IMG/VR virus record: IMGVR_UViG_3300009093_000034
Location: 124,001-188,000 of that record
Reading direction: 5' to 3' (one strand)
DNA: 64,000 bases
In this document: in pieces, positions 7,806 to 32,881 of the stretch
Layout: every line of letters begins with the position of its first letter
Position numbering within the stretch: the first letter of the stretch is position 1
Made by a program: the position numbers and the translations under genes
The notes under the pieces: generated by a model
Told to the model about the DNA's origin: nothing
What the model saw: the letters and a program-made list of their open reading frames with translations, nothing else
The model's database searches: none

Positions 7806-8273
7806 ATGGAACAACTATCAGAATCCTTAGGCGTCGGCTTCTACAGAGTAGGTCGAATCACCATCCCAGTAAGAATGGCATCACATGCCACAGATCGCCT
7901 GGAACAAAGGTTTCCTGGTGTTGAGATCTCCCAAGTTAAAGAGATATTGAATAAGGGTGTTCAGCAGATCGCCCAACCAAGTGGTCACGTTGAACTTGGG
8001 CAATATTTGATCATCGATCAAAATGATGGTGTGATGTTGCCTATCAAGATTCAGAAGAATGATCGACCTGGGTATGAGAGACAAACCATGGGATTCATCC
8101 CAACGGTTATGGATTGGAAACTTCAATCAGACTCTGATTACCCTGAAGATCTCTTAGACAAGTACCACTTCTTGAAGAAGATCTACGTAGAAAGTGCTTC
8201 ACGATGGGAGGTTCCCAATCTGTCGAAGACAGGAACCTTTAATGGAGAACCTTGTACCATCATCTACGTCTAA
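7806..8273 (+). CDS. Hypothetical protein
   Basis: 155-aa ORF in operon. Confidence 0.6.
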   Translation: MEQLSESLGVGFYRVGRITIPVRMASHATDRLEQRFPGVEISQVKEILNKGVQQIAQPSGHVELGQYLIIDQNDGVMLPIKIQKNDRPGYERQTMGFIPTVMDWKLQSDSDYPEDLLDKYHFLKKIYVESASRWEVPNLSKTGTFNGEPCTIIYV

Positions 8274-8284
8274 AGGAATTTGAC

Positions 8285-9196
8285 ATGAGTGACACCTTAA
8301 CACTAGAGATCCTAGTCGGTGCCCCTGCTTCTGGTAAGTCCACTTACGCAGAAGAAAAACTAAAGACTGAGAAGAACTGGGTGAGGATCAACAAAGATAC
8401 CTTGAGAACCCAACTTCGTCAGGCCAAGAAAGATTTTACCGAGCGTGAGCTCAACAGTATTGAAGACATTCACATTGAGGCTGCGCTCAAAGCGGGATCA
8501 AGCGTGATCGTTGACGACACCAACTTGAATCCTTTCCATGTCAAAGATCGTCTACGACCTTTGGGACGGAAGTACGGAGCCAGAGTTCTTGTTAACACTG
8601 AGTTTCTTAAGGTTCCTGTGGAAGAACTGATTTCTCGAGACAAGAGACGAAAGAACTCTGTTGGTGCAGATGTCATCAACGACATGGTCGACAGGTTCTA
8701 TGCTACTTGGCTTAGGAACGCCACTCCTTGGTTGGATACAATCAAGGAAAACAAAGAGAAGACTCCTGTTTATCTCTTTGACTTGGACGGTACCTTGGCC
8801 TTCGCTACAGAGCGAGGTTGGTACGAGGACAAGTTGGCAGGAACGGACACTCCTAACATTCCTGTCATGGGAATCTTGAAGAGTCTTCTTCGCTCTGTGA
8901 GAGTCATCTTTGTTTCTGGTCGAGAAGATAAGTCTTGGCAAGTCACGTGGGATTGGCTCATTAAGCACAGTGAAGTAGGTTTTGACACGTGGGATTCTGG
9001 TCAACCTATGCTCTTGATGAGAAAGACGGGTGACGAGCGTTCTGATGACGTAGTCAAGGCTGAGATCTATAACGAGCAGATCAAGGACAACTTCAATGTT
9101 CTTGGGATCTTCGATGATCGACCTAAGGTCGTTCGAATGTGGAAGTCTCTTGGCTTGTTTGTGTTCGATTGTTACCAATCTGACCAAGAGTTCTAA
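8285..9196 (+). CDS. pseT: Polynucleotide 5'-kinase/3'-phosphatase (T4 PseT-like)
   Basis: P-loop GAPASGKST, RINKDTLR, HAD motif FDLDGT, FDDRPKVV. Confidence 0.93.
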   Translation: MSDTLTLEILVGAPASGKSTYAEEKLKTEKNWVRINKDTLRTQLRQAKKDFTERELNSIEDIHIEAALKAGSSVIVDDTNLNPFHVKDRLRPLGRKYGARVLVNTEFLKVPVEELISRDKRRKNSVGADVINDMVDRFYATWLRNATPWLDTIKENKEKTPVYLFDLDGTLAFATERGWYEDKLAGTDTPNIPVMGILKSLLRSVRVIFVSGREDKSWQVTWDWLIKHSEVGFDTWDSGQPMLLMRKTGDERSDDVVKAEIYNEQIKDNFNVLGIFDDRPKVVRMWKSLGLFVFDCYQSDQEF

Positions 9197-12903: not shown

Positions 12904-13923
12904 ATGGATATCAAGATCATCGGTTGTGGCGGAGCTTTCTCCGAAGACGGTTATTTATTTCACCAGTCTTTTTTGATCAGTGAAGGTGGAGAGAACCTTC
13001 TATTTGATATGGGCAAGGACGTTTGGCCTTGGGCTATGAAGAAGCAAGGCTTGGGTGTTAATGACATCCATCAGGTCTTGATCACTCACCGTCATGACGA
13101 TCACATCGGTTCATTGGGAACTTTTGGTCTCAAGAGATACAATTGGTTTGAGAAACCTATTCACTGGAAAGACTCAAAGAGAGATTACGCTCCTACCCTG
13201 ATTTACTCCATGGACCTTCAAGATGGTCTTTGGGAGTCTCTTAGAGGTAACCTTGAAACCAATGAAGGTTTCGTAGGTTCTTTGGAAACGTTCTTCAAGT
13301 TGAAGCCTATCAAGGAAAACGAGCACTGGGATTTCCACGGTTGGGATCTTCAATTGGTTCGCCAAGTCCATGTCATGGCCGGAAACTCTTTGATGAGTAC
13401 TCATGGTTTGTTCCTGGAGAAGGGTGATCACAGAATCTTCCTGACCGGTGACTGTCAGTTCTTCCAGCCCAAACAGGTTATCTGGTTCTACAACCGAGCT
13501 ACCTTCATCATCACAGACAACGAAACTGTAGGATCCAACTTCCTTTTCCAAGAAGGAACTGAAGTCTACGACGTAACCATCGATGGAAAGAAGGTTACCA
13601 AGCTTTGGCCTACTCTTCTTGAAGACCCTGATGGAATGAAGGTCATGGAACTAATGGCCCAGGATTTCACTCCCTACAAGTGGGAAGTCTTGAAATTCTC
13701 TTCAGGTGTTCACTCGACCTATCCTGAATTGGCAGGTTATCCTTCCGCCAATGCTACAAGGCTTGCTCCTGAGATCAAGAAAAAGATGCACCTTTCTCAC
13801 TATGGTGACCACGTTCCTCAGAACAAGGATGCCTTTGGCAATGATCTTGACTGGGAAGCTCAAGCTAAGAAAGACGGCTTTGCTGGATTCGTCAAGCCTG
13901 GACAGGTCTTTCATTTCGAGTAA
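12904..13923 (+). CDS. MBL-fold metallohydrolase, Apyc1-like cyclic-nucleotide phosphodiesterase (alternative: RNase Z-like)
   Basis: IGCGGAFS, ITHRHDDHIG (HxHxDH), TGDCQF, SGVH, HYGD. Confidence 0.8.
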   Translation: MDIKIIGCGGAFSEDGYLFHQSFLISEGGENLLFDMGKDVWPWAMKKQGLGVNDIHQVLITHRHDDHIGSLGTFGLKRYNWFEKPIHWKDSKRDYAPTLIYSMDLQDGLWESLRGNLETNEGFVGSLETFFKLKPIKENEHWDFHGWDLQLVRQVHVMAGNSLMSTHGLFLEKGDHRIFLTGDCQFFQPKQVIWFYNRATFIITDNETVGSNFLFQEGTEVYDVTIDGKKVTKLWPTLLEDPDGMKVMELMAQDFTPYKWEVLKFSSGVHSTYPELAGYPSANATRLAPEIKKKMHLSHYGDHVPQNKDAFGNDLDWEAQAKKDGFAGFVKPGQVFHFE

Positions 13924-16202: not shown

Positions 16203-16325
16203 GTTCTCTTGAACAGCGGAACGGCACCTGCAGAAGGCTGGTACGATGTCGGATAGTACCTAAGTGTTGCTGGACTGGCACGCGGCTCGCAAGCCGAGGA
16301 AGAGGTTCGAGTCCTCTAGGGAACA
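16203..16325 (+). ncRNA. tRNA-shelled RNA with expanded D arm
   Basis: Acceptor GTTCTCT/AGGGAAC, perfect T arm, ~60-nt branched D region. Confidence 0.6.
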
Positions 16326-20715: not shown

Positions 20716-20787
20716 AACAGGATAGTGTTTAACGGTAGCGCGGCGGCCTTCGGGACGAAAGTAGTGGTTCGAATCCACTTCCTGGGC
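20716..20787 (+). pseudogene. Degenerate tRNA-Pro(CGG)-like
   Basis: Intact T arm and D loop, 5-bp acceptor, broken anticodon stem around TT-CGG-GA. Confidence 0.5.
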
Positions 20788-20994
20788 AGAAAAGATAGTT
20801 CGGTTAACGGTGTTGGTCTTTACTACTGTCGGGATCCTCTCCCTTATGAGTGTAAAGAGCTGATCCGACCAGGCGAGCAGTGCGAGAAGGAAAAACAGGC
20901 GTTACAGAGATGGATGTGACGTCAATGCCTGATCATCGCGTCGCGTACTTGAGGGACAATAACCTGACAAAACCCTCAGGATCTACTTTTTCAC

Positions 20995-21068
20995 AGGTCA
21001 ATCGTCTAAGTTAGGACGCAGGAGCTTCCGTGCCACCCTGAGTATGGGTTCAAGTCCCATGAGACCTA
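20995..21068 (+). pseudogene. Degenerate tRNA (Gly-TCC-like) with 14-nt anticodon loop
   Basis: D arm TCGTCTAAGTTAGGAC, perfect T arm, CAGG/CCTG stem. Confidence 0.5.
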
Positions 21069-21226
21069 AACGGAACAGGTCGGTTAATAACGACGTTGAA
21101 GAATAGTCCTTCACGCCAGCTTGCTGGAAGGGTATTAAGGGCGAGTAAGCAACGGAGTAGGCCAGCGGACGAATATCCGCCAATGGAGGTAATCAACCCT
21201 CCCCTATAAGTTCCACTTTTTATATT

Positions 21227-21375
21227 GGATATGTGGCGAAACTAGTAACCGCGCTGGCCTGGAGGGGAACTTGATTACACACCCTCGGAATCTGGCGCTC
21301 GGTCGGTGAGCGAAATCAAGTAGCAAGATCCGTAAATAGACTCCGAGCTTGTAGGTGCGACTCCTATCATATTCA
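21227..21375 (+). ncRNA. tRNA-Leu-like shell with ~90-nt pseudoknotted insertion
   Basis: GGATATG/CATATTC-A, Leu/Ser-type D arm, T arm; ACTTGATT pairs with downstream AATCAAGT. Confidence 0.65.
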
Positions 21376-21486
21376 AAAGAGGAAGCAATTCCTGACTTCT
21401 ACGGAACGTCAGGTGGAAAACTCTTTGCTATACACCCAGCTAATAACTGGCACGCGGATGGTTCACTGAAGTTTCAGTCCGCACAT

Positions 21487-21558
21487 GCCTCTGTCGTCTA
21501 CAGGAAGGATCCCTGGTTTTCACCCAGGCGGACGTCGGTTCGAATCCGGCCAGAGGTA
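21487..21558 (+). tRNA. tRNA-Glu(TTC)
   Basis: CCTGG-TT-TTC-AC-CCAGG. Confidence 0.9.
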
Positions 21559-21631
21559 TAATTGGTCATTCGATCAAAACAAGGATCTTTTTGCTACCTT
21601 AGGACCGTTTGGTACGCAAAAGGAGAATTTT

Positions 21632-22273
21632 ATGATAGAGTATCCATCAATCATCAACAGCTCAAAAGCACCTCGTCAATCGATGATTGCGTTTGAGAAG
21701 TTGGACGGGAGTAACATCCGAGTCAAGTACACAGCTAAGAGAGGATTTGATCTCTTCGGAAGTCGAACTCAACTATTGGATGAAACTCATCCGATTCTTG
21801 GTGGTGTAGTCAAAGTCTTCAACGAGACCTGTAAGGAAGCGTTGGAAGAGTACTTCAGGAAGTACTACTCAAAGGAACGAGAGATCGAAGTCTTCGGAGA
21901 GTACGTCGGGCCTAACTCGTTTGCAGGCTTCCACTCGGATCCTGTTGACAAGATGAAGTTCGTGCTGTTTGACGTTATGATGATCCGTAAGGGTTATAAT
22001 GAGTTCTTGCTTCCGCAGGAGTTCATCAAGCTAGCGGAGCGTAACGCATCAGTTCCAGTCCCTAGAGTGATCTACGAAGGTAATCTTACCGACGATTTCA
22101 TCTCAAGAGTCCGTGCTGACGAGTTTGGAACATTCGAAGGTGTGGTCTGTAAGGGAAAGCAAGGACTCGGTTCTTTCCGAGGGAAAGTTTGGATGTGCAA
22201 GATCAAAACGAATGCATATCTAGAACTTCTCAAAGAAAAGAAAGGCGCAGACTGGGTTAAGTTTGCAGAGTAA
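21632..22273 (+). CDS. RNA ligase (Rnl2-like nucleotidyltransferase)
   Basis: Motif I EKLDGSNIR, FGE, FDV, EGVVCK, CKIK; RBS AAGGAG. Confidence 0.85.
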   Translation: MIEYPSIINSSKAPRQSMIAFEKLDGSNIRVKYTAKRGFDLFGSRTQLLDETHPILGGVVKVFNETCKEALEEYFRKYYSKEREIEVFGEYVGPNSFAGFHSDPVDKMKFVLFDVMMIRKGYNEFLLPQEFIKLAERNASVPVPRVIYEGNLTDDFISRVRADEFGTFEGVVCKGKQGLGSFRGKVWMCKIKTNAYLELLKEKKGADWVKFAE

Positions 22274-22279
22274 GACACG

Positions 22280-22431
22280 AACAGACTTAGTGATTTGACG
22301 ACGAGTCCGGTGGAGTTGCGCCGGTATCACGCAGGACGGAAAAGGTCACCAGGGCTAGTGCTGATCTCCTAAGCTATACTAGGCACCGAATCGCTCCAAG
22401 CCACGCAATTGGCGAAGCCTGTAAGTCTGTT
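22280..22431 (+). ncRNA. Orphan structured RNA
   Basis: 10-bp closing stem AACAGACTTA/TAAGTCTGTT. Confidence 0.5.
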
Positions 22432-22451
22432 TATTTTCAAAGAGGTCCAAA

Positions 22452-22748: not shown

Positions 22749-22753
22749 TCTTT

Positions 22754-22842
22754 TGGGGTGCTTTTGGGAGGGAAACACGGTTCGAGTCCGTGGATGCTGG
22801 GTGCGGCGACGGCCACCGGGGGTTCGATTCCCCTCACCTCAA
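22754..22842 (+). tRNA. Atypical tRNA (Ser-CGA-like) whose anticodon loop is T-loop-like
   Basis: TGGGGTG/CACCTCA, CACGG-TTCGAGT-CCGTG, 25-nt variable arm, T arm. Confidence 0.5.
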
Positions 22843-22930
22843 TACAAAATACTCTAGTTTTCTTACCTGTTAAATCTTAAACTAATCTCCGTTAGGAGAA
22901 AAATTAGGAATTACCAGGAGGTAATGATAT

Positions 22931-23926
22931 ATGCAAGATACTAGAGGCAACAAGAATCCTCTCGTAGGCTGGATCACACTAGGAGTAATTGCTCTCCTTG
23001 CTGTAACAGTCGTGTTTTCTTCTTTCTCTGTGATTGGTTCTACCGATCGTGGTGTAAAGATCCGATTGGGTGCTATTCAAACTGACCAAGGAGTTCTTCC
23101 TTCAGGTCTCGTCTGGAAGATCCCTTTCATCGAAGACGTAAGAACGATTTCGATGTTGCCTCAAGAGATCGATGTCTCGATCAAGGTCGATGATGATGGT
23201 GCAATCACTAAGGATAACCAGACCATCGGCATGGGATTGACAGTGTTCTATACTTACAAGCCTGAAGGGGTCGTTCAGATCCTGAAAGATTTGTCAGTAG
23301 AAAAAGTTGCCAGCTTGGTACAGTCAGGTATGGTTCAGGACGTTAAGCAGGTTCATGGTGGGTACTCGATCTACGATATCGCCCAGAACCAAGCAAAGCT
23401 CCAACAGGAATCCATGGCTTCACTTAAGCAGACGATGTCCGCCTACCCTATCAACGTGACTGAGCTTCGTATCAAGAACTACGATTGGGGAAAAGAGTTT
23501 GACGAGCAGATCAAGACTACGATGTCTAAGGCCCAACAGGTTCTTCAGGCAAAGCAAGACTTGGATCGAAGAACTATCGAACTCCAGAAAGACGTTGCTG
23601 AATCAAGTGCTAAGAAGCAACAAACTGTGTTGGACGCAGAAGCTGCTGCTCAACAGGTTACCATCGCTGCTACTGCAGAGAAGGACGCCGCAAGAGCTAG
23701 AGCTGAAGCTAAGACCATTGAGGGTGAGGCCATACGAAAGTACAACGCCTCTATCGCCCAGAACCTTGATGTTCAACTTGCTTTGAAGAAGTTGGATATC
23801 GAAGCGACCAAAGCTGCTAGATGGGACGGACATAACGTTCCTACGAACAACTACGGTCCAATTCCTGTCCAAACCAACGCTGGCCTTGCTGGTGTGAAAG
23901 TGGACGACGTTTCGAGTCAGAAGTAA
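22931..23926 (+). CDS. SPFH/band-7 (prohibitin-like) membrane protein
   Basis: N-terminal TM, GVKIRLGAI..GLVWKIPFIEDV, C-terminal coiled coil. Confidence 0.88.
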   Translation: MQDTRGNKNPLVGWITLGVIALLAVTVVFSSFSVIGSTDRGVKIRLGAIQTDQGVLPSGLVWKIPFIEDVRTISMLPQEIDVSIKVDDDGAITKDNQTIGMGLTVFYTYKPEGVVQILKDLSVEKVASLVQSGMVQDVKQVHGGYSIYDIAQNQAKLQQESMASLKQTMSAYPINVTELRIKNYDWGKEFDEQIKTTMSKAQQVLQAKQDLDRRTIELQKDVAESSAKKQQTVLDAEAAAQQVTIAATAEKDAARARAEAKTIEGEAIRKYNASIAQNLDVQLALKKLDIEATKAARWDGHNVPTNNYGPIPVQTNAGLAGVKVDDVSSQK

Positions 23927-23966
23927 GAGTTTGGGGGGCTTCGGCCCCCAAATTCAAATTCAACAT

Positions 23967-24129
23967 GGAGTCCGAACCCCAACAAATCAGAGCAAGGGTG
24001 AAGGATCGTTGACCTTATCGTGGAACGTAACGGTGAACAGGGCTTCCCAGGCTGGCCAGTAATGGGAATACAACTAACGTAACTAAGTAAGCGCACGAGG
24101 CGTGTGGGTGCAACTCCCACTGGACTCCC
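23967..24129 (+). ncRNA. tRNA-shelled RNA (8/5 acceptor-T geometry) with ~130-nt insertion
   Basis: GGAGTCCG/TGGACTCC plus T arm GTGGG-TGCAACT-CCCAC. Confidence 0.6.
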
Positions 24130-24157
24130 TTTTATACTAAAATGTAGTAGGTAATTC

Positions 24158-24625
24158 ATGGATCATCCTTACGGCTTCTATATCACAGAAGAAAATGAGA
24201 TATTAAGCTTTGATGAGGAAGACTACAAGTTTCCCATCTCCAGAGTAGACAAAATGTCTCACCCTGGAAGAATCTATACAGGAGAGAACATGCACAGTGC
24301 TGTTTATTGCCCTTCGTGTAATCGAAGGCACACCAAGGCCGATGCTCGTCGAGCCCGCGGAACGATTTTTGTTCCTTGCTCTTGCGGAAGTCACTTCGAC
24401 TTCTACAATCAGAACCTGATCAACACGGTGCTTGCCGTCGAGTTGATGCAGCTGGCTATGGACACGAGTCCTTTCACGGATTTCTCGACTCCTAGCTTCG
24501 ACCCCAGTCCCAGCTACGATTCTTCGCCGAGCTATGACTCGTCACCGAGTTTCGATAGCTCTCCCAGCTTTGATTCGAGTCCTTCGTTCGACTCGAGTTC
24601 GAGCTTCGATTCCAGTTCTTTTTGA
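24158..24625 (+). CDS. Zn-finger-like protein with C-terminal PS(Y/F)DSS hexapeptide repeats
   Basis: CPSC..CSCG; 6-7 repeats encoded by varied codons. Confidence 0.7.
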   Translation: MDHPYGFYITEENEILSFDEEDYKFPISRVDKMSHPGRIYTGENMHSAVYCPSCNRRHTKADARRARGTIFVPCSCGSHFDFYNQNLINTVLAVELMQLAMDTSPFTDFSTPSFDPSPSYDSSPSYDSSPSFDSSPSFDSSPSFDSSSSFDSSSF

Positions 24626-24630
24626 TCAAT

Positions 24631-24880
24631 AAGACTTAGTTCGCCCTGTCGCTGGAGCCTGCAGGTCAGTGCCTCCAGAGGAAGTTCGCGGCGCCAAAAC
24701 CTACCGTGGGAGACCTAATCCGTCGTTATCACCACGTAAGGCGCAACCTAAACAGCTTGAGGGTGTCGGTTTCCCTTTGAGAGCGGGTTAGGGCAGCCAG
24801 AGAAGGCCATGGACACGAAAGTGTCTGTGAGATAAATGACGATGGGTAGAAACAGAACCGCGGCTATGAGACTAAGTCTT
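24631..24880 (+). ncRNA. rnpB: RNase P RNA (compact bacterial type)
   Basis: P1 AAGACTTAGT/ACTAAGTCTT, P3 CTGGAG/CTCCAG, CR-I GAGGAAGTTCGCGGC, GCGCAAC, P18 GACAC-GAAA-GTGTC, AGATAAATGA, CR-V AAACAGAACCGCGGCTA. Confidence 0.85.
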
Positions 24881-24898
24881 TCTTTTAAGGAAAAGAAA

Positions 24899-25815: not shown

Positions 25816-26032
25816 AAAGGTGTGGTGGAAGTCCGCTAGTAGATTGCTACTAGGCCCATGTGAATGGCCATTTGTATGGGATTGGGAAACAAAGACACAA
25901 GCTAGGTCGGGGCAAGACGGCCCATGTCAGAGGTTAAACTCTCTATCAACGGAGAGATCCTAGCTGCTACCTTGGTACGAGTATATCTTGGCGGGAAGTC
26001 ATAGCGTTCAGGTTCGAGACCTGACACCTTTT
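25816..26032 (+). ncRNA. tRNA-shelled RNA with tmRNA-like topology but non-Ala acceptor
   Basis: AAAGGTG/CACCTTT, T arm TCAGG-TTCGAGA-CCTGA, CCGC/GCGG helix enclosing ~155 structured nt. Confidence 0.6.
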
Positions 26033-28216: not shown

Positions 28217-28314
28217 AGGCGTCTTCTGGACTGATTGGAAACGGGTTCGATTCCCGTTGCGCCTAAAAACTTTCCCTCACTCGTACGAGATGAGGCGACC
28301 TCAATTTAAGGAGG
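28217..28314 (+). ncRNA. tRNA/Y-RNA-like element in the TROVE leader
   Basis: Perfect T arm 28241-28257; CGCCT can pair with 28218 or 28293 AGGCG; CCTC/GAGG hairpin covers the RBS. Confidence 0.45.
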
Positions 28315-28320
28315 TTGTCT

Positions 28321-29889
28321 ATGTCTAGAATGGCAAACAACCCCAAGGCTGCTACTGCAGCTAAGACCATGAGGAACATTCCTCAGGCAGATACTTTCAA
28401 CAAGGCAGGAGGACGAGCATATTCCAAGTCGGCTAAGGTCGAGCTTGCGGATCTCTTGTTCTCAAACTTCTTGTCCGGAGACACTTACCGAAAGGAAAGT
28501 GAAGTCTCCAAGAGGATCGAGGAGCTTGCTTCTCAGATCGAAGACAAGGAGTTCTTGGCCAAGGCCGCTCTTTACACTCGTAATGAGCTTGGCATGAGGA
28601 CCATGAGCCATCTGTTGGCAGGTGAGATCGCTTCCAAGAACTACGCTTCTGGCTCCGGCTGGGGACGTACCTTCTTCGATGCAATCGTCTACCGTGTCGA
28701 CGACATGGCTGAGATCCTTGGTTACTTCCTCGGAAAGGACCACAAAGCAATCCCTAACTCCCTAAAGTCTGGCTTCTCGTAAGCCTTCGATCGTTTCGAC
28801 GCCTACCAGTTGGCCAAGTATCGTGGTGACAGCAACGCTGTAAAGCTTGTTGACATTGTTCGACTTGTCCACCCGAAGGGAAACGAAAAGAACAAGACTG
28901 CTCTTGAGCAACTTGTTAAGGGAACCCTAAGAAACACCAAGACTTGGGAGGCTAAGGTCTCCGCAGCAGGTCAGAAGGCAACTTCCAAGGAAGCTGTCGC
29001 TGCTACCGCTGAGGCTTGGGAAGACCTTCTTAAGGAGAACAAGCTTGGTTACCTTGCTTTGATTCGTAACTTGACGAACATCGCCAACTCTGTTGATGAT
29101 GCTACGTTTGAGACGGCTCTGGCTCAGGTGATCGATGAGAAGTCTGTAAAGACCTCTCTAGTTCTTCCTTTCCAACTCTACATCGCTGCAAAGCAAGTAG
29201 AGAACGAGGGAAGGATCAAGAATCACAGCAGAATGTCAAAGGTGATCGACGCGCTGACCGCAGCCATCGACGTTTCTTTGTCCAACGTTCCTAAGCTCGA
29301 GGGCAAGACTCTCGTTGCAGTGGACATCTCTGGATCAATGGACTCTCGTCTATCAGCCATGGGTCAAGCTCGTGTTGTTGACGTAGCAACTCTCTTCGGT
29401 GTTGTCTTGGCTAAGGCTAACGATGCTGATTTGGTTCGCTTCAACACCAGTGCTTCCTACTCTGTTGTTCCTAAGTCTAGGTCTACTCTTGACTCTGTCA
29501 AGAGCTTGGCACAGACCGGTGGTGGTACTGCCTTCGAGTCCATCATGTACTTGATCAACCAGTCACAGACTGTCTACGATAGGATCTTGGTTCTATCTGA
29601 CATGCAGTCTTGGTCAGGAAAGACCGGAGGAGACTTCGCTCGCCTTGTCCAAGAGTACAGAAACAACAAGAAGCGTCCTAACATGACCTTCCTTTCGTGG
29701 GACCTCCACGGAGGAACCTCTCACCAGGTTCCTGAGTCTGATCCTCGTTCCATCGTCCTAGGAGGATGGAGTGACAAGATCTTCGACATCTTGGCAGAGA
29801 CCGAGACCGATCGAAACGCTCTAGTGAAGACCATCGAAGAGTACGAGATCAAGGTTCCTACCAAGGAACGAGCTCGTAAGACTGCGTAA
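28321..29889 (+). CDS. rsr: Ro60/TROVE-vWA RNA-binding protein interrupted by one in-frame TAA (28780-28782)
   Basis: NKAGGRAY, YTRNELGMRT, *AFDRFDAYQLAKYR continues in frame, LVHPK, TWE, ALIRNL, vWA VDISGSM and GGT..SDMQ. Confidence 0.88.
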
Positions 29890-31936: not shown

Positions 31937-32881
31937 ATGCGTAAAGACGTCCTCTTGTCTCGCGACGCCTTCCGCAAGGCTGTCTTTGATCGAGACCACA
32001 ACACATGCGTATTCTGTTCTCTTCCTGCAGTAGATGCTCACCACATCATGGAGCGAAAGCTCTGGCCTGATGGTGGCTACTATTTGAACAATGGTGCCTC
32101 CGTCTGCGAACAGCATCACTGGGATTGTGAGAACTCCATCATCTCTGTTGAACAAGTCAGAAAGGCTTGTAACATCATCGACATCATTCTTCCTCCTTAC
32201 TTTTCTGAGAATCAAATCTACGATAAGTGGGGAAATCAGAAGCTCACGACTGAAGAAGCCGGAGCTATCAAGTACCCTAGAACTTATCACTTCCCTTGGT
32301 CCCAAAATCTCATCAACGACGATCGAATGTTGGAGTCTACTTCTCAGTTCGAACTCAACCACGTGATCGCTACGGTCAAGATGGATGGTGAAAACACGAC
32401 CATGACTAGAGATGCTTGTCACGCAAGGTCTCTTGATAGTGGAGCTCATCCTTCTAGAACTTGGGTCAGATCTTTTTGGGGTTCTCTCAAACACAACATT
32501 CCAGAAGGTTGGAGAGTTTGTGGAGAAAATCTTTACGCAAAACACTCAATCCTTTATACTGATCTCACCAGCTATTTCCAAGGCTTATCAATCTGGAATG
32601 ACAAGAACATTTGTCTGTCCTGGAAAGAGACCAAAGAATGGTTTGAACTTCTTGGCATTCAACCTGTCCAAGAGATCTACGATGGCATGTACTACGAAAA
32701 AGGCATCAAGGATCTTTGGGACCCAACAAAAGGTTGGGAAGGCTACGTAGTTCGGTTCGCAGAGGAATTTCCTATGAGAGATTTCAATCTCAAGGTAGGA
32801 AAGTTTGTTAGAAAAGGCCATGTTCAAACTGATGAACATTGGATGCAACAAGCTCTGACACCTAATAAACTCCAGGCCTAA
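31937..32881 (+). CDS. HNH endonuclease-RNA ligase fusion
   Basis: N-term CVFC..DAHHI..LCxxHH; C-term KYPRTYHFPWS, VKMDGENTT, CGENLY, EGYVVR, KFVR. Confidence 0.85.
   Translation: MRKDVLLSRDAFRKAVFDRDHNTCVFCSLPAVDAHHIMERKLWPDGGYYLNNGASVCEQHHWDCENSIISVEQVRKACNIIDIILPPYFSENQIYDKWGNQKLTTEEAGAIKYPRTYHFPWSQNLINDDRMLESTSQFELNHVIATVKMDGENTTMTRDACHARSLDSGAHPSRTWVRSFWGSLKHNIPEGWRVCGENLYAKHSILYTDLTSYFQGLSIWNDKNICLSWKETKEWFELLGIQPVQEIYDGMYYEKGIKDLWDPTKGWEGYVVRFAEEFPMRDFNLKVGKFVRKGHVQTDEHWMQQALTPNKLQA

What the first reader, a model, noticed from the sequence alone, without database searches (positions are those of the whole stretch)
23967..24129. tRNA shell with 8/5 geometry and a 130-nt cargo
An 8-bp acceptor plus 5-bp T stem gives the 13-bp length typical of bacterial tRNA-Sec, but the interior is several hairpins with no anticodon arm. 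It follows a strong GC hairpin (about 23928-23957).
Basis: seen in the sequence. Interest (0 to 1): 0.62.

Follow-up and report, generated by a model that had tools for sequence, protein, structure and literature searches.

The report
tRNA-like shell RNA in jumbo phage
A 163-base stretch in the tRNA island of an uncultured 306-kb soil phage keeps only the acceptor stem and T arm of a tRNA around about 130 bases of unrelated sequence; it is probably a non-decoding tRNA mimic matured like a tRNA, but no transcript or distant homolog could be found.

Summary
At 23967-24129 (+) there are seven Watson-Crick pairs plus a G.U pair, abutting a 5-bp T stem with a 7-nt loop. There is no D or anticodon arm.

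This geometry alone is common in the genome (133 cases against 74 in shuffles). Requiring a tRNA-type T loop changes that: 7 long shells against 0.33 expected, six on the tRNA strand. The T loop UGCAACU recurs in this phage's own tRNAs.

It is not tRNA-Sec. The tRNA-Sec model does not match, there is no UCA anticodon arm, the discriminator is C, and the phage has no SelB. It is also not tmRNA, not an intron-bearing tRNA (0 of 1386 excisions) and not a canonical YrlA.

Context: a 252-nt RNase P RNA-like gene 500 nt downstream, a CCA-adding enzyme, PNKP, two RNA ligases and a Ro60 gene.

Best reading (about 0.45): a tRNA-derived "top-half" mimic cut by RNase P and CCA-tailed into a stable RNA, as with T4 species 1 RNA. 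A GUCCGAA motif hints at Ro60 binding.

Weak points: no RNA data, no homologs beyond strain variants, and an interior that folds no better than shuffled sequence.

The parts
23930..23952 (+). GC-rich hairpin (UUUGGGGG / CCCCCAAA, UUCG-type loop), 14 nt upstream of the element and just after the SPFH stop codon (23924-23926). No U tract follows it on the + strand.
   Evidence: Sequence and scan. The region carries substitutions and 7-nt net deletions in related strains.
23967..23974 (+). Acceptor-like 5' strand GGAGUCCG. Nt 4-10 read GUCCGAA, which resembles a Ro60-contact motif.
   Evidence: Motif as described in PMC4201824. G8>A in strains X3 and X5.
23978..24066 (+). Long irregular arm (cargo). 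Pair probabilities are 0.5-0.8, and the fold is no more stable than shuffled sequence.
24067..24090 (+). A-rich single-stranded linker with UAA triplets in all three frames.
24091..24103 (+). Small hairpin GCGC-ACGAG-GCGU directly 5' of the T arm, in the position of a variable arm.
   Evidence: Pair probability 0.76-0.95
24104..24120 (+). T arm GUGGG-UGCAACU-CCCAC, with G where tRNAs have U55.
   Evidence: The same loop type occurs in the phage's tRNA-Cys, tRNA-Thr, two uncalled 81-nt tRNA-like genes and element A.
24121..24133 (+). Acceptor 3' strand UGGACUCC (24121-24128), discriminator C (24129) and UUUU trailer. No CCA is encoded.
   Evidence: None of the phage's tRNAs encode CCA.
24632..24883 (+). 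Context: 252-nt RNase P RNA-like gene (P1-P4, CR-I, CR-IV and CR-V kept; specificity domain mostly absent).
   Evidence: Rfam RF00010, 39.6 bits, E 4e-10 in local scans. Six distinct relatives (seven aligned sequences with this one) on eight other viral contigs, all eight beside tRNA genes. Not recovered by the genome-scale search.
39354..40742 (+). Context: CCA-adding enzyme (PolyA_pol head, RNA-binding and HD domains).
   Evidence: Pfam
28315..29889 (+). Context: Ro60/Rsr ortholog (TROVE plus Ro60 vWA domains), interrupted by one in-frame TAA at 28780-28782. Same strand, 4.2 kb downstream of the element.
21227..21375 (+). Sister element A: 149-nt tRNA-like gene with acceptor, D arm and T arm (loop UGCGACU); about 95 nt stand in place of the anticodon arm.
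   Evidence: Rfam tRNA 26.9 bits, E 0.014
25816..26032 (+). Sister element C: 217-nt shell with a perfect 7-bp closing stem and a canonical T arm (UUCGAGA), immediately before tRNA-Arg(CCU).

Best explanation
The element is a tRNA-derived gene that no longer decodes. It keeps the tRNA 'top half': an acceptor stem stacked on a T arm, which is the part read by RNase P, RNase Z and the CCA-adding enzyme. The D and anticodon half is replaced by about 115-130 nt of other sequence.

Proposed mechanism (inferred, not shown):
1. It is co-transcribed with the + strand genes and tRNAs of the island.
2. RNase P, the host's or the phage's own reduced RNase P RNA-like gene 500 nt downstream, cuts between 23966 and 23967.
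3. The 3' end is trimmed to the discriminator at 24129.
4. The phage CCA-adding enzyme adds CCA.

The product would be a nuclease-resistant RNA of about 166 nt whose tRNA-like handle carries a cargo, a natural counterpart of the laboratory 'tRNA scaffold'. The cargo's job is unknown. The most concrete lead is Ro60 binding through GUCCGAA in the 5' strand of the terminal stem.
For: - The anatomy is exact and well defined: acceptor and T-arm pair probabilities are 0.98 or more.
- Long shells with a tRNA-type T loop are strongly enriched: 7 loci against 0.33 in shuffles, six on the tRNA strand.
- The T loop UGCAACU is the phage's own tRNA variant.
- Element A has the same design and scores as a tRNA with a large insertion.
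- The element fills a 232-nt gap between + strand genes. Like the phage's tRNAs it starts with G and encodes no CCA.
- The phage encodes the maturation kit: an RNase P RNA-like gene, a CCA-adding enzyme and a metallo-beta-lactamase-fold protein, and PNKP plus two RNA ligases.
- In related strains at about 90-97% identity, nt 23967-24113 carry at most 3 substitutions. The upstream hairpin and the end of the SPFH gene carry many. The one listed change, G8>A, is compatible with the eighth pair.
- Precedents: T4 species 1 RNA has a T arm next to its 3' end plus hairpin cargo. M. smegmatis YrlA is cut by RNase P and CCA-tailed (PMC4201824).
Against: - No RNA run holds the region, so transcription and the RNA ends are unproven.
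- No homolog beyond strain variants was found, so there is no covariation.
- The interior folds no better than shuffles.
- The T loop has G where tRNAs carry the near-invariant U55.
- The same island holds clearly degenerate tRNA remnants, so decay is a live alternative.
- No long shells were found in about 90 kb of loci from other phages that carry the RNase P-like RNA.
- The strain conservation rests on two short contigs.
Confidence: 0.45

Rival explanations
1. Decayed or disrupted tRNA gene. A former tRNA lost its D and anticodon half to insertion or rearrangement, and the intact stems are leftovers with no function.
For: The island contains several degenerate tRNA-like remnants with 5-bp acceptors or broken anticodon stems. 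One tRNA-like element (22749-22849) is present or absent among strains. The interior shows no thermodynamic signal. There are no distant homologs.
Against: Both distant acceptor strands remain perfectly complementary (7 WC plus G.U), and the T arm is perfect, while nothing tRNA-like survives between them. Neutral decay would be expected to erode the stems as well. The element is less diverged among strains than its flanks. Six well-formed long shells on one strand point to a maintained design.
Confidence: 0.25
2. Non-canonical Y RNA. The terminal stem with GUCCGAA binds the phage Ro60 protein, and the T arm supplies the tRNA mimicry seen in bacterial Y RNAs.
For: A Ro60 ortholog lies 4.2 kb downstream on the same strand. 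GUCCGAA at nt 4-10 sits in the 5' strand of a stem formed by the two ends. It matches 6 of 7 bases of the Xenopus contact motif GGUCCGA and contains the CGAA core used to find phage Y RNAs (PMC4201824; PMC12135203). Some D. radiodurans Rsr-linked RNAs carry T arms, one of them without U55, and Y RNAs can be co-transcribed with tRNAs. In phages G and Atuin the Ro60 gene also sits inside a tRNA island. Next to Atuin's Ro60 gene there are two tRNA-like stretches of about 137 nt overlapping a partial YrlA hit.
Against: There is no Rfam Y_RNA or YrlA hit at E<=10. The module order differs from YrlA: here the T arm stacks on the terminal stem, whereas YrlA runs T, then acceptor-like hairpin, then D in the middle. 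The bacterial motif GNCGAAN0-1G is not fully met (UCCGAAC). The stem has no bulge. The Ro60 gene carries an in-frame TAA. The motif was noticed after the fact. The distance is just beyond the 4 kb reported as typical.
Confidence: 0.12
3. Punctuation signal. The tRNA-like shell exists only so that RNase P and RNase Z cut the polycistronic transcript, separating the SPFH mRNA (its 3' end protected by the upstream hairpin) from the downstream gene. Plant mitochondrial t-elements work this way.
For: A stable hairpin lies 14 nt upstream, and the element ends 29 nt before the next start codon. No sigma-70-like promoter or intrinsic terminator lies in the gap. The phage has an RNase P RNA-like gene.
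Against: A minimal signal needs only about 35-75 nt, so the 130-nt cargo and its conservation among strains are unexplained. Most other gene junctions in the island use ordinary tRNAs or nothing.
Confidence: 0.1
4. A decoding tRNA after all: a tRNA-Sec-like species, or a tRNA with an intron that is spliced out.
For: 13-bp acceptor/T stack. A small hairpin sits where a long variable arm would be. The phage has RNA ligases and PNKP that could in principle seal exons. The ARAGORN list shows no tRNA-Met.
Against: None of 1386 single excisions gives an ARAGORN tRNA, while elements C and E give many. There is no tRNA or tRNA-Sec model hit, no UCA or CAU in a 7-nt loop on a 5-bp stem, the discriminator is C, and the phage has no SelB.
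Confidence: 0.02
5. Chance, or a protein gene on the other strand. An 80-codon ORF (23917-24159, minus strand) spans the gap.
For: The bare geometry is common. The ORF exists.
Against: With the phage-type T loop the expected number is 0.33 per genome against 7 observed. The ORF has no PHROG match, runs against all its neighbours and reads through the GC hairpin.
Confidence: 0.06

Closest known systems
Phage T4 species 1 RNA (rnaC), a stable RNA of unknown function in the T4 tRNA cluster
   Same: It lies in a phage tRNA island on the tRNA strand and is about 140 nt long. A canonical T arm sits right before the 3' end, the two ends pair weakly, and the interior is hairpins rather than D and anticodon arms. 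Its function is still unknown (PMC9697503).
   Different: No sequence similarity. T4 rnaC has a UUCGAAU loop and a strongly stable fold (z = -4.6), whereas this element has a UGCAACU loop, a perfect 8-bp closing stem and an interior with no stability signal.
Bacterial and phage Y RNAs (YrlA, Rfam RF02553) bound by Ro60/Rsr
   Same: tRNA mimicry. A stem is formed by the 5' and 3' ends, with a CGAA-type motif in its 5' strand. The gene sits near a Ro60 gene on the same strand. One member is cut by RNase P and CCA-tailed (PMC4201824).
   Different: No model hit. The T arm sits at the 3' end stacked on the terminal stem rather than in the middle. There is no D arm or acceptor-like hairpin, and no U55. 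The motif only partly matches.
tmRNA tRNA-like domain
   Same: Acceptor plus T arm with the anticodon arm replaced by a long insert. The interior has an A-rich stretch with stop codons.
   Different: A3-U70 instead of G3.U70. No pseudoknots or credible tag frame. No ARAGORN or Rfam tmRNA call. It is half the usual size.
Bacterial tRNA-Sec
   Same: 8 + 5 = 13 stacked pairs, and a hairpin in the variable-arm position.
   Different: No anticodon arm and no 6-bp D stem. The discriminator is C. No model hit, and the phage has no SelB.
t-elements of plant mitochondria, mascRNA, and the laboratory tRNA scaffold
   Same: The acceptor and T-arm mimic serves as a handle for RNase P and RNase Z cutting and for stability, with non-tRNA sequence attached or embedded.
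   Different: Those systems are eukaryotic, organellar or engineered. Whether this element is processed at all has not been tested.

Membership tests
tRNA (RF00005) | Cloverleaf with D arm, anticodon arm and 7-nt anticodon loop; detected by the covariance model or ARAGORN | tested here: not met
   No tRNA hit at E<=10 in a 501-nt scan. ARAGORN finds nothing at default or relaxed settings, with or without introns. 0 of 1386 single-excision products are called as tRNA.
tRNA (RF00005) | 7-bp acceptor stacked on a 5-bp T stem with a 7-nt T loop (U54-U55-C56-R57-A58) | tested here: inconclusive
   The stems are present and perfect. The loop is UGCAACU, with G at position 55. The phage's own tRNA-Cys and tRNA-Thr share this variant.
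tRNA-Sec (RF01852) | 13-bp acceptor/T stack (8/5 in bacteria) | tested here: met
   7 WC pairs plus G8.U24121 next to the 5-bp T stem. The eighth pair has probability 0.65.
tRNA-Sec (RF01852) | UCA anticodon arm, 6-bp D stem, G73, covariance-model match | tested here: not met
   The model matches 24 other places in the genome but not this one. The discriminator is C. The only UCA lies in an unpaired stretch of about 9-16 nt, depending on the fold.
tRNA-Sec (RF01852) | Selenocysteine machinery (SelB) available in the genome | tested here: not met
   TIGR00475 has no match in the 305,833-bp phage genome. The host is unknown.
tmRNA (RF00023) | G3.U70 alanine identity, tag reading frame, pseudoknots, model match | tested here: not met
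   The pair is A3-U70. There is no ARAGORN tmRNA call and no Rfam tmRNA hit here, although two other places in the window give weak tmRNA tRNA-like-domain hits.
YrlA / bacterial Y RNA (RF02553) | Covariance-model match; module order Ro-site, V, T, acceptor-like hairpin, D | tested here: not met
   No hit at E<=10. The T arm is the last module and stacks on the terminal stem. The same library does find a partial YrlA in phage Atuin.
YrlA / bacterial Y RNA (RF02553) | GNCGAAN0-1G (or GGUCCGA-like) motif near the 5' end, in or beside the terminal stem | tested here: inconclusive
   Nt 4-10 read GUCCGAA: 6 of 7 of GGUCCGA, with the CGAA core present, but the flanking G positions of the bacterial motif are not met.
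YrlA / bacterial Y RNA (RF02553) | Encoded within about 4 kb of a Ro60 gene on the same strand | tested here: inconclusive
   Same strand, 4.2 kb upstream of 28315. The Ro60 gene has an in-frame TAA.
YrlA / bacterial Y RNA (RF02553) | Binds Ro60/Rsr | not testable with these tools
   Needs a gel shift or pull-down.
T4-type stable tRNA-cluster RNA (rnaC-like; no formal family) | Stable non-tRNA RNA processed from a phage tRNA transcript, with a T arm at its 3' end | tested here: inconclusive
   Location and architecture agree. There is no sequence similarity and no expression data.

The most novel reading that the evidence does not exclude
This phage runs its own RNA-maturation circuit. A reduced, phage-borne RNase P RNA and a phage CCA-adding enzyme would process a set of 'long shells' (elements A-E, this one being B). 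In each, a tRNA top half serves as a natural scaffold that delivers and stabilises a non-tRNA cargo. The cargo of this element, with GUCCGAA in its terminal stem, would be a new type of Y RNA that recruits the phage Ro60 protein.
Probability: 0.15. Interest if true: 0.75.

Novelty: new variant of a known kind. Interest (0 to 1): 0.5.

Why it matters
Phage tRNA islands are normally annotated as codon-supply sets, and anything tRNA finders miss is ignored. This genome holds several well-formed genes that keep only the part of a tRNA read by the processing enzymes. They sit beside a phage-borne RNase P RNA-like gene, a CCA-adding enzyme, RNA repair enzymes and a Ro60 gene.

If these shells are expressed, they would be natural tRNA scaffolds. 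They would extend the half-century-old puzzle of the T4 species 1 and 2 RNAs to jumbo phages, and they would give Ro60, RNase P and CCA-adding biochemistry concrete viral substrates to test.

If they are not expressed, they show how tRNA genes decay in large phage genomes.

Tried and rejected
**Searches for homologs, all blank beyond strain level**
- blastn of the 3-kb neighbourhood against cultured phages.
- Both flanking proteins against phages.
- Flanking and island proteins (SPFH, CCA-adding enzyme, PNKP) against IMG/VR, and the downstream protein against JGI metagenomes, which returned only the source contig.
- An exact 23-mer of the T arm plus acceptor in IMG/VR.
- Word and HMMER searches with the downstream orphan protein.
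- SPFH homologs reach 46% identity at most and have only 60-80 nt after the gene, so no synteny.
- Two capsid relatives are fragments without the tRNA island.
- A second sample carries the identical sequence.
- Records with the RNase P-like RNA hold no match apart from an ordinary tRNA T arm.

**Identities rejected**
- Intron-bearing tRNA.
- tRNA-Sec.
- tmRNA.
- Any Rfam family, including self-cleaving ribozymes and introns, at E<=10.
- Minus-strand ORF.
- Paralogs of the cargo in the genome, or antisense targets of the linker: only chance-level 10-13-mers.

**Other checks**
- Stop-codon recoding was looked at: 24 same-frame open-stretch pairs split by one stop (TAA 16, TGA 4, TAG 4), judged consistent with ordinary neighbouring genes; not compared with a null.
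- Thermodynamic z-scores were uninformative for this element and for its sisters A and C.
- The genome-scale RF00010 search did not recover the RNase P-like hit. That identification rests on local scans and on the alignment of relatives.

Full report
**Setting.** The window is bases 124001-188000 of a 305,833-bp viral contig with direct terminal repeats, from a rhizosphere metagenome. It is a jumbo phage. Its capsid protein has only one weak match among cultured phages. ARAGORN tRNA genes, nearly all on the + strand between about 108 and 160 kb, and none encodes CCA. The finding lies in a 232-nt gap between an SPFH/band-7 gene (22931-23926) and an orphan 155-codon gene (24158-24625), both on the + strand.

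**The observation.**
- The sequence shows GGAGUCCG (23967-23974) pairing with UGGACUCC (24121-24128): seven Watson-Crick pairs and a closing G.U.
- Directly beside it is the hairpin GUGGG-UGCAACU-CCCAC (24104-24120), followed by a discriminator C and UUUU.
- In an unconstrained partition function these stems have probabilities of 0.98-1.0, and the eighth pair 0.65. A small hairpin just 5' of the T arm (24091-24103) reaches about 0.94.
- The rest is an irregular arm (23978-24066, pair probabilities 0.5-0.8) and a 24-nt A-rich single strand.
It has no U tract after it.

**Is it more than chance?**
- Thermodynamics says nothing: z = -0.64 for the whole element and +0.56 for the interior.
- The bare geometry is common: 133 cases in the genome against a mean of 74 in shuffles.
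- The T loop, however, is of tRNA type. The exact variant, with G where tRNAs have U55, is used by the phage's tRNA-Cys, tRNA-Thr, two 81-nt tRNA-like genes that ARAGORN misses, and the 149-nt element A.
- Requiring a tRNA-type T loop closed by G-C, a 5-bp stem and a 7-bp acceptor at 95-260 nt leaves 7 loci, against 0.33 per shuffled genome. Six are on the + strand.
- The element is therefore one of a small set of 'long shells'. They are E (genome 55611, 110 nt), D (window 16203-16325), A (21227-21375), B (this one), C (25816-26032), and one doubtful case that overlaps a tRNA.

**What it is not.**
- No Rfam family matches at E<=10.
- ARAGORN finds no tRNA or tmRNA under any setting.
- Removing any single internal segment never yields an ARAGORN tRNA (0 of 1386), whereas elements E and C do. 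It is not an intron-bearing tRNA.
- The tRNA-Sec idea fails on every feature except the 13-bp stack. The model does not match here, there is no UCA arm, the discriminator is C, and there is no SelB.
- It lacks the G3.U70 pair of tmRNA.
- The 80-codon minus-strand ORF has no family match and runs against all its neighbours.

**Context that bears on mechanism.**
- About 500 nt downstream, local Rfam scans find a 252-nt match to bacterial RNase P RNA. It spans the whole model, with P1-P4, CR-I (GAGGAAGUUCGCGG), CR-IV and CR-V (ACAGAACCGCGGCUA). Most of the specificity domain is absent.
- A pattern built from CR-IV and CR-V found eight other viral contigs. All eight hits lie beside tRNA genes. Six of the contigs were extracted for alignment, and all six also carry the CR-I variant. 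The seven aligned sequences share the core blocks, and their P3 sequences differ while staying self-complementary; this was read by eye and no pair counts were made.
- A genome-scale search did not recover the hit. I rate it as very likely real but not proven.
- The window also encodes a CCA-adding enzyme and a metallo-beta-lactamase-fold protein, PNKP and two RNA ligases.
- It also encodes a Ro60/Rsr ortholog at 28315-29889. This is split by one in-frame TAA and is collinear with an intact homolog in a 635-kb phage.

**Conservation.**
- No RNA run holds the region.
- Contigs from four soil runs carry relatives at about 90-97% identity.
- One contig has all but one of its 13 substitutions upstream of the element. 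Another, covering 23881-24113, has at most 3 within the element. The upstream hairpin and the end of the SPFH gene vary freely.
- The only listed change inside the element is G8>A. It would convert G.U to A-U if the partner base is unchanged, but that base was not covered.
- This is weak support for constraint.
- No more distant relatives exist in any collection searched, so covariation cannot be tested.

**Interpretation.**
- RNase P, RNase Z and CCA-adding enzymes read the acceptor/T-arm half of a tRNA; this is established knowledge.
- An RNA that keeps only that half, inside a tRNA operon of a phage carrying its own RNase P-like RNA and CCA enzyme, is most simply a tRNA mimic. It would be matured like a tRNA into a stable RNA that carries a cargo.
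- The nearest precedent is T4 species 1 RNA, which has a T arm at its 3' end, hairpin cargo and no known function.
- A second precedent is the Y RNA family. Y RNAs mimic tRNA, and one of them is cut by RNase P and CCA-tailed (PMC4201824).
- Nt 4-10 read GUCCGAA, close to the Ro60-contact motif GGUCCGA and containing the CGAA core. A Ro60 gene lies 4.2 kb downstream on the same strand.
- This is a lead, not a membership. The module order differs from YrlA, no model matches, the motif was noticed after the fact, and the Ro60 gene is interrupted.
- The hexamer AGUCCG is rare in the genome (28 on the + strand), yet it occurs in five non-coding spots of this 6-kb stretch, including elements B and C. 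I cannot explain this.

**Rivals.**
- The island also contains clearly degenerate tRNA remnants, and a tRNA-like element is present or absent among strains. A dead tRNA gene is therefore the main rival.
- Against it stand the perfect long-range pairing around an interior with nothing tRNA-like left, and the recurrence of the design.
- A pure processing-signal role fits the upstream hairpin but not the conserved 130-nt cargo.

**Verdict.** The feature is real and tRNA-derived. The tRNA-Sec reading is wrong. The function is inferred rather than shown. I rate it a new variant of a known kind (phage tRNA mimics and stable tRNA-cluster RNAs), with moderate interest that would rise sharply with one northern blot or an RNase P assay.

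Noticed in passing
window 24632-24883 (+); relatives at L038:11670-11958(-), L039:1469-1846(+), L041:1038-1323(+), L042:7117-7390(-), L043:2110-2393(+), L044:1058-1365(-): A 252-nt RNase P RNA-like gene with P1-P4, CR-I, CR-IV and CR-V but almost no specificity domain (Rfam 39.6 bits, E 4e-10 locally, below the gathering score). A CR-IV/CR-V pattern hit eight other IMG/VR contigs of varied GC content, all beside tRNA genes; the six that were aligned also share the unusual CR-I variant. No paper describing a phage-borne RNase P RNA came up in the searches made. The genome-scale search missed the hit.
   Followed up: partly
window 28315-29889 (+): A Ro60/Rsr ortholog (TROVE plus vWA domains) interrupted by a single in-frame TAA at 28780-28782. 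Both halves are collinear with an intact 483-aa homolog in huge phage LR745206. It could be a pseudogene, a sequencing error or read-through; this was not resolved.
   Followed up: partly
window 21227-21375 (+): Element A: a 149-nt tRNA-like gene (Rfam tRNA 26.9 bits) with acceptor, D arm and T arm, and about 95 nt where the anticodon arm should be. It looks like a natural 'tRNA scaffold'.
   Followed up: partly
window 25816-26032 (+), 16203-16325 (+); L007:15611-15721 (+): More long shells, elements C (217 nt), D (123 nt) and E (111 nt), with canonical T arms and 7-bp closing stems. Element E looks like a tRNA(UAU) with a hairpin of about 28 nt inserted after the anticodon loop. Element C gives ARAGORN tRNAs only if about 146 nt right after the acceptor strand are removed.
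   Followed up: partly
window 22749-22849 (+): A 92-nt tRNA-like gene with G3.U70, matched by the Rfam tmRNA model at its tRNA-like domain only (21.9 bits). ARAGORN calls it tRNA-Ser(CGA). Contigs of two related strains skip exactly these 101 nt.
   Followed up: partly
window 28218-28266 (+): A mini tRNA-like domain of about 50 nt (6-bp acceptor, a tmRNA-like D-loop stretch, canonical T arm, no anticodon arm) directly upstream of the Ro60 gene. It gives a weak Rfam tmRNA hit (15.2 bits).
   Followed up: no
window 22280-22440 (+): A non-coding stretch of about 160 nt closed by a 9-10-bp stem of its two ends and followed by a U-rich tail. It contains GGCGAAG, a full match to the Y RNA motif GNCGAAN0-1G, near its 3' side, and AGUCCG near its 5' side.
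   Followed up: no
window 20716-21226 (+): About 500 nt without a convincing ORF. It holds two orphan canonical T arms (20763, 21044) within degenerate tRNA-like sequences that have 5-bp acceptors. One is preceded by GACGAAAG.
   Followed up: no
L011:810-890, L011:2636-2716, L010:11582-11662 (+): Three 81-nt tRNA-like genes missed by ARAGORN, each with a G1.U72 pair and odd D regions. Their loops read as anticodons UAG, CAA and UAA, so they may be the phage's missing tRNA-Leu species.
   Followed up: no
window 35775-35849 (+): An amber-suppressor-type tRNA (anticodon CUA, 68.6 bits). TAG is the rarest stop codon of long ORFs, but no sign of in-frame TAG recoding was seen.
   Followed up: partly
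window 8252-9196, 12904-13923, 21485-22273, 31937-32881, 39354-40742 (+): An RNA repair and maturation kit inside the tRNA island: PNKP, a metallo-beta-lactamase-fold protein (RNase Z-like or Apyc1-like), two RNA ligases and a CCA-adding enzyme.
   Followed up: no
L035:7480-7760 (+) (Arthrobacter phage Atuin): Just downstream of Atuin's Ro-like gene, two tandem tRNA-like stretches of about 137 nt (Rfam tRNA 23-25 bits) overlap a partial YrlA hit. The 3' acceptor strand of the first can pair either with its own 5' strand or with the next element's 5' strand.
   Followed up: no
window 21476, 22304, 23969, 25830 (+): The hexamer AGUCCG is rare genome-wide (28 on the + strand), yet it occurs in four non-coding elements within 4.4 kb, plus once in a T-loop context at 22785. 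This is unexplained.
   Followed up: no
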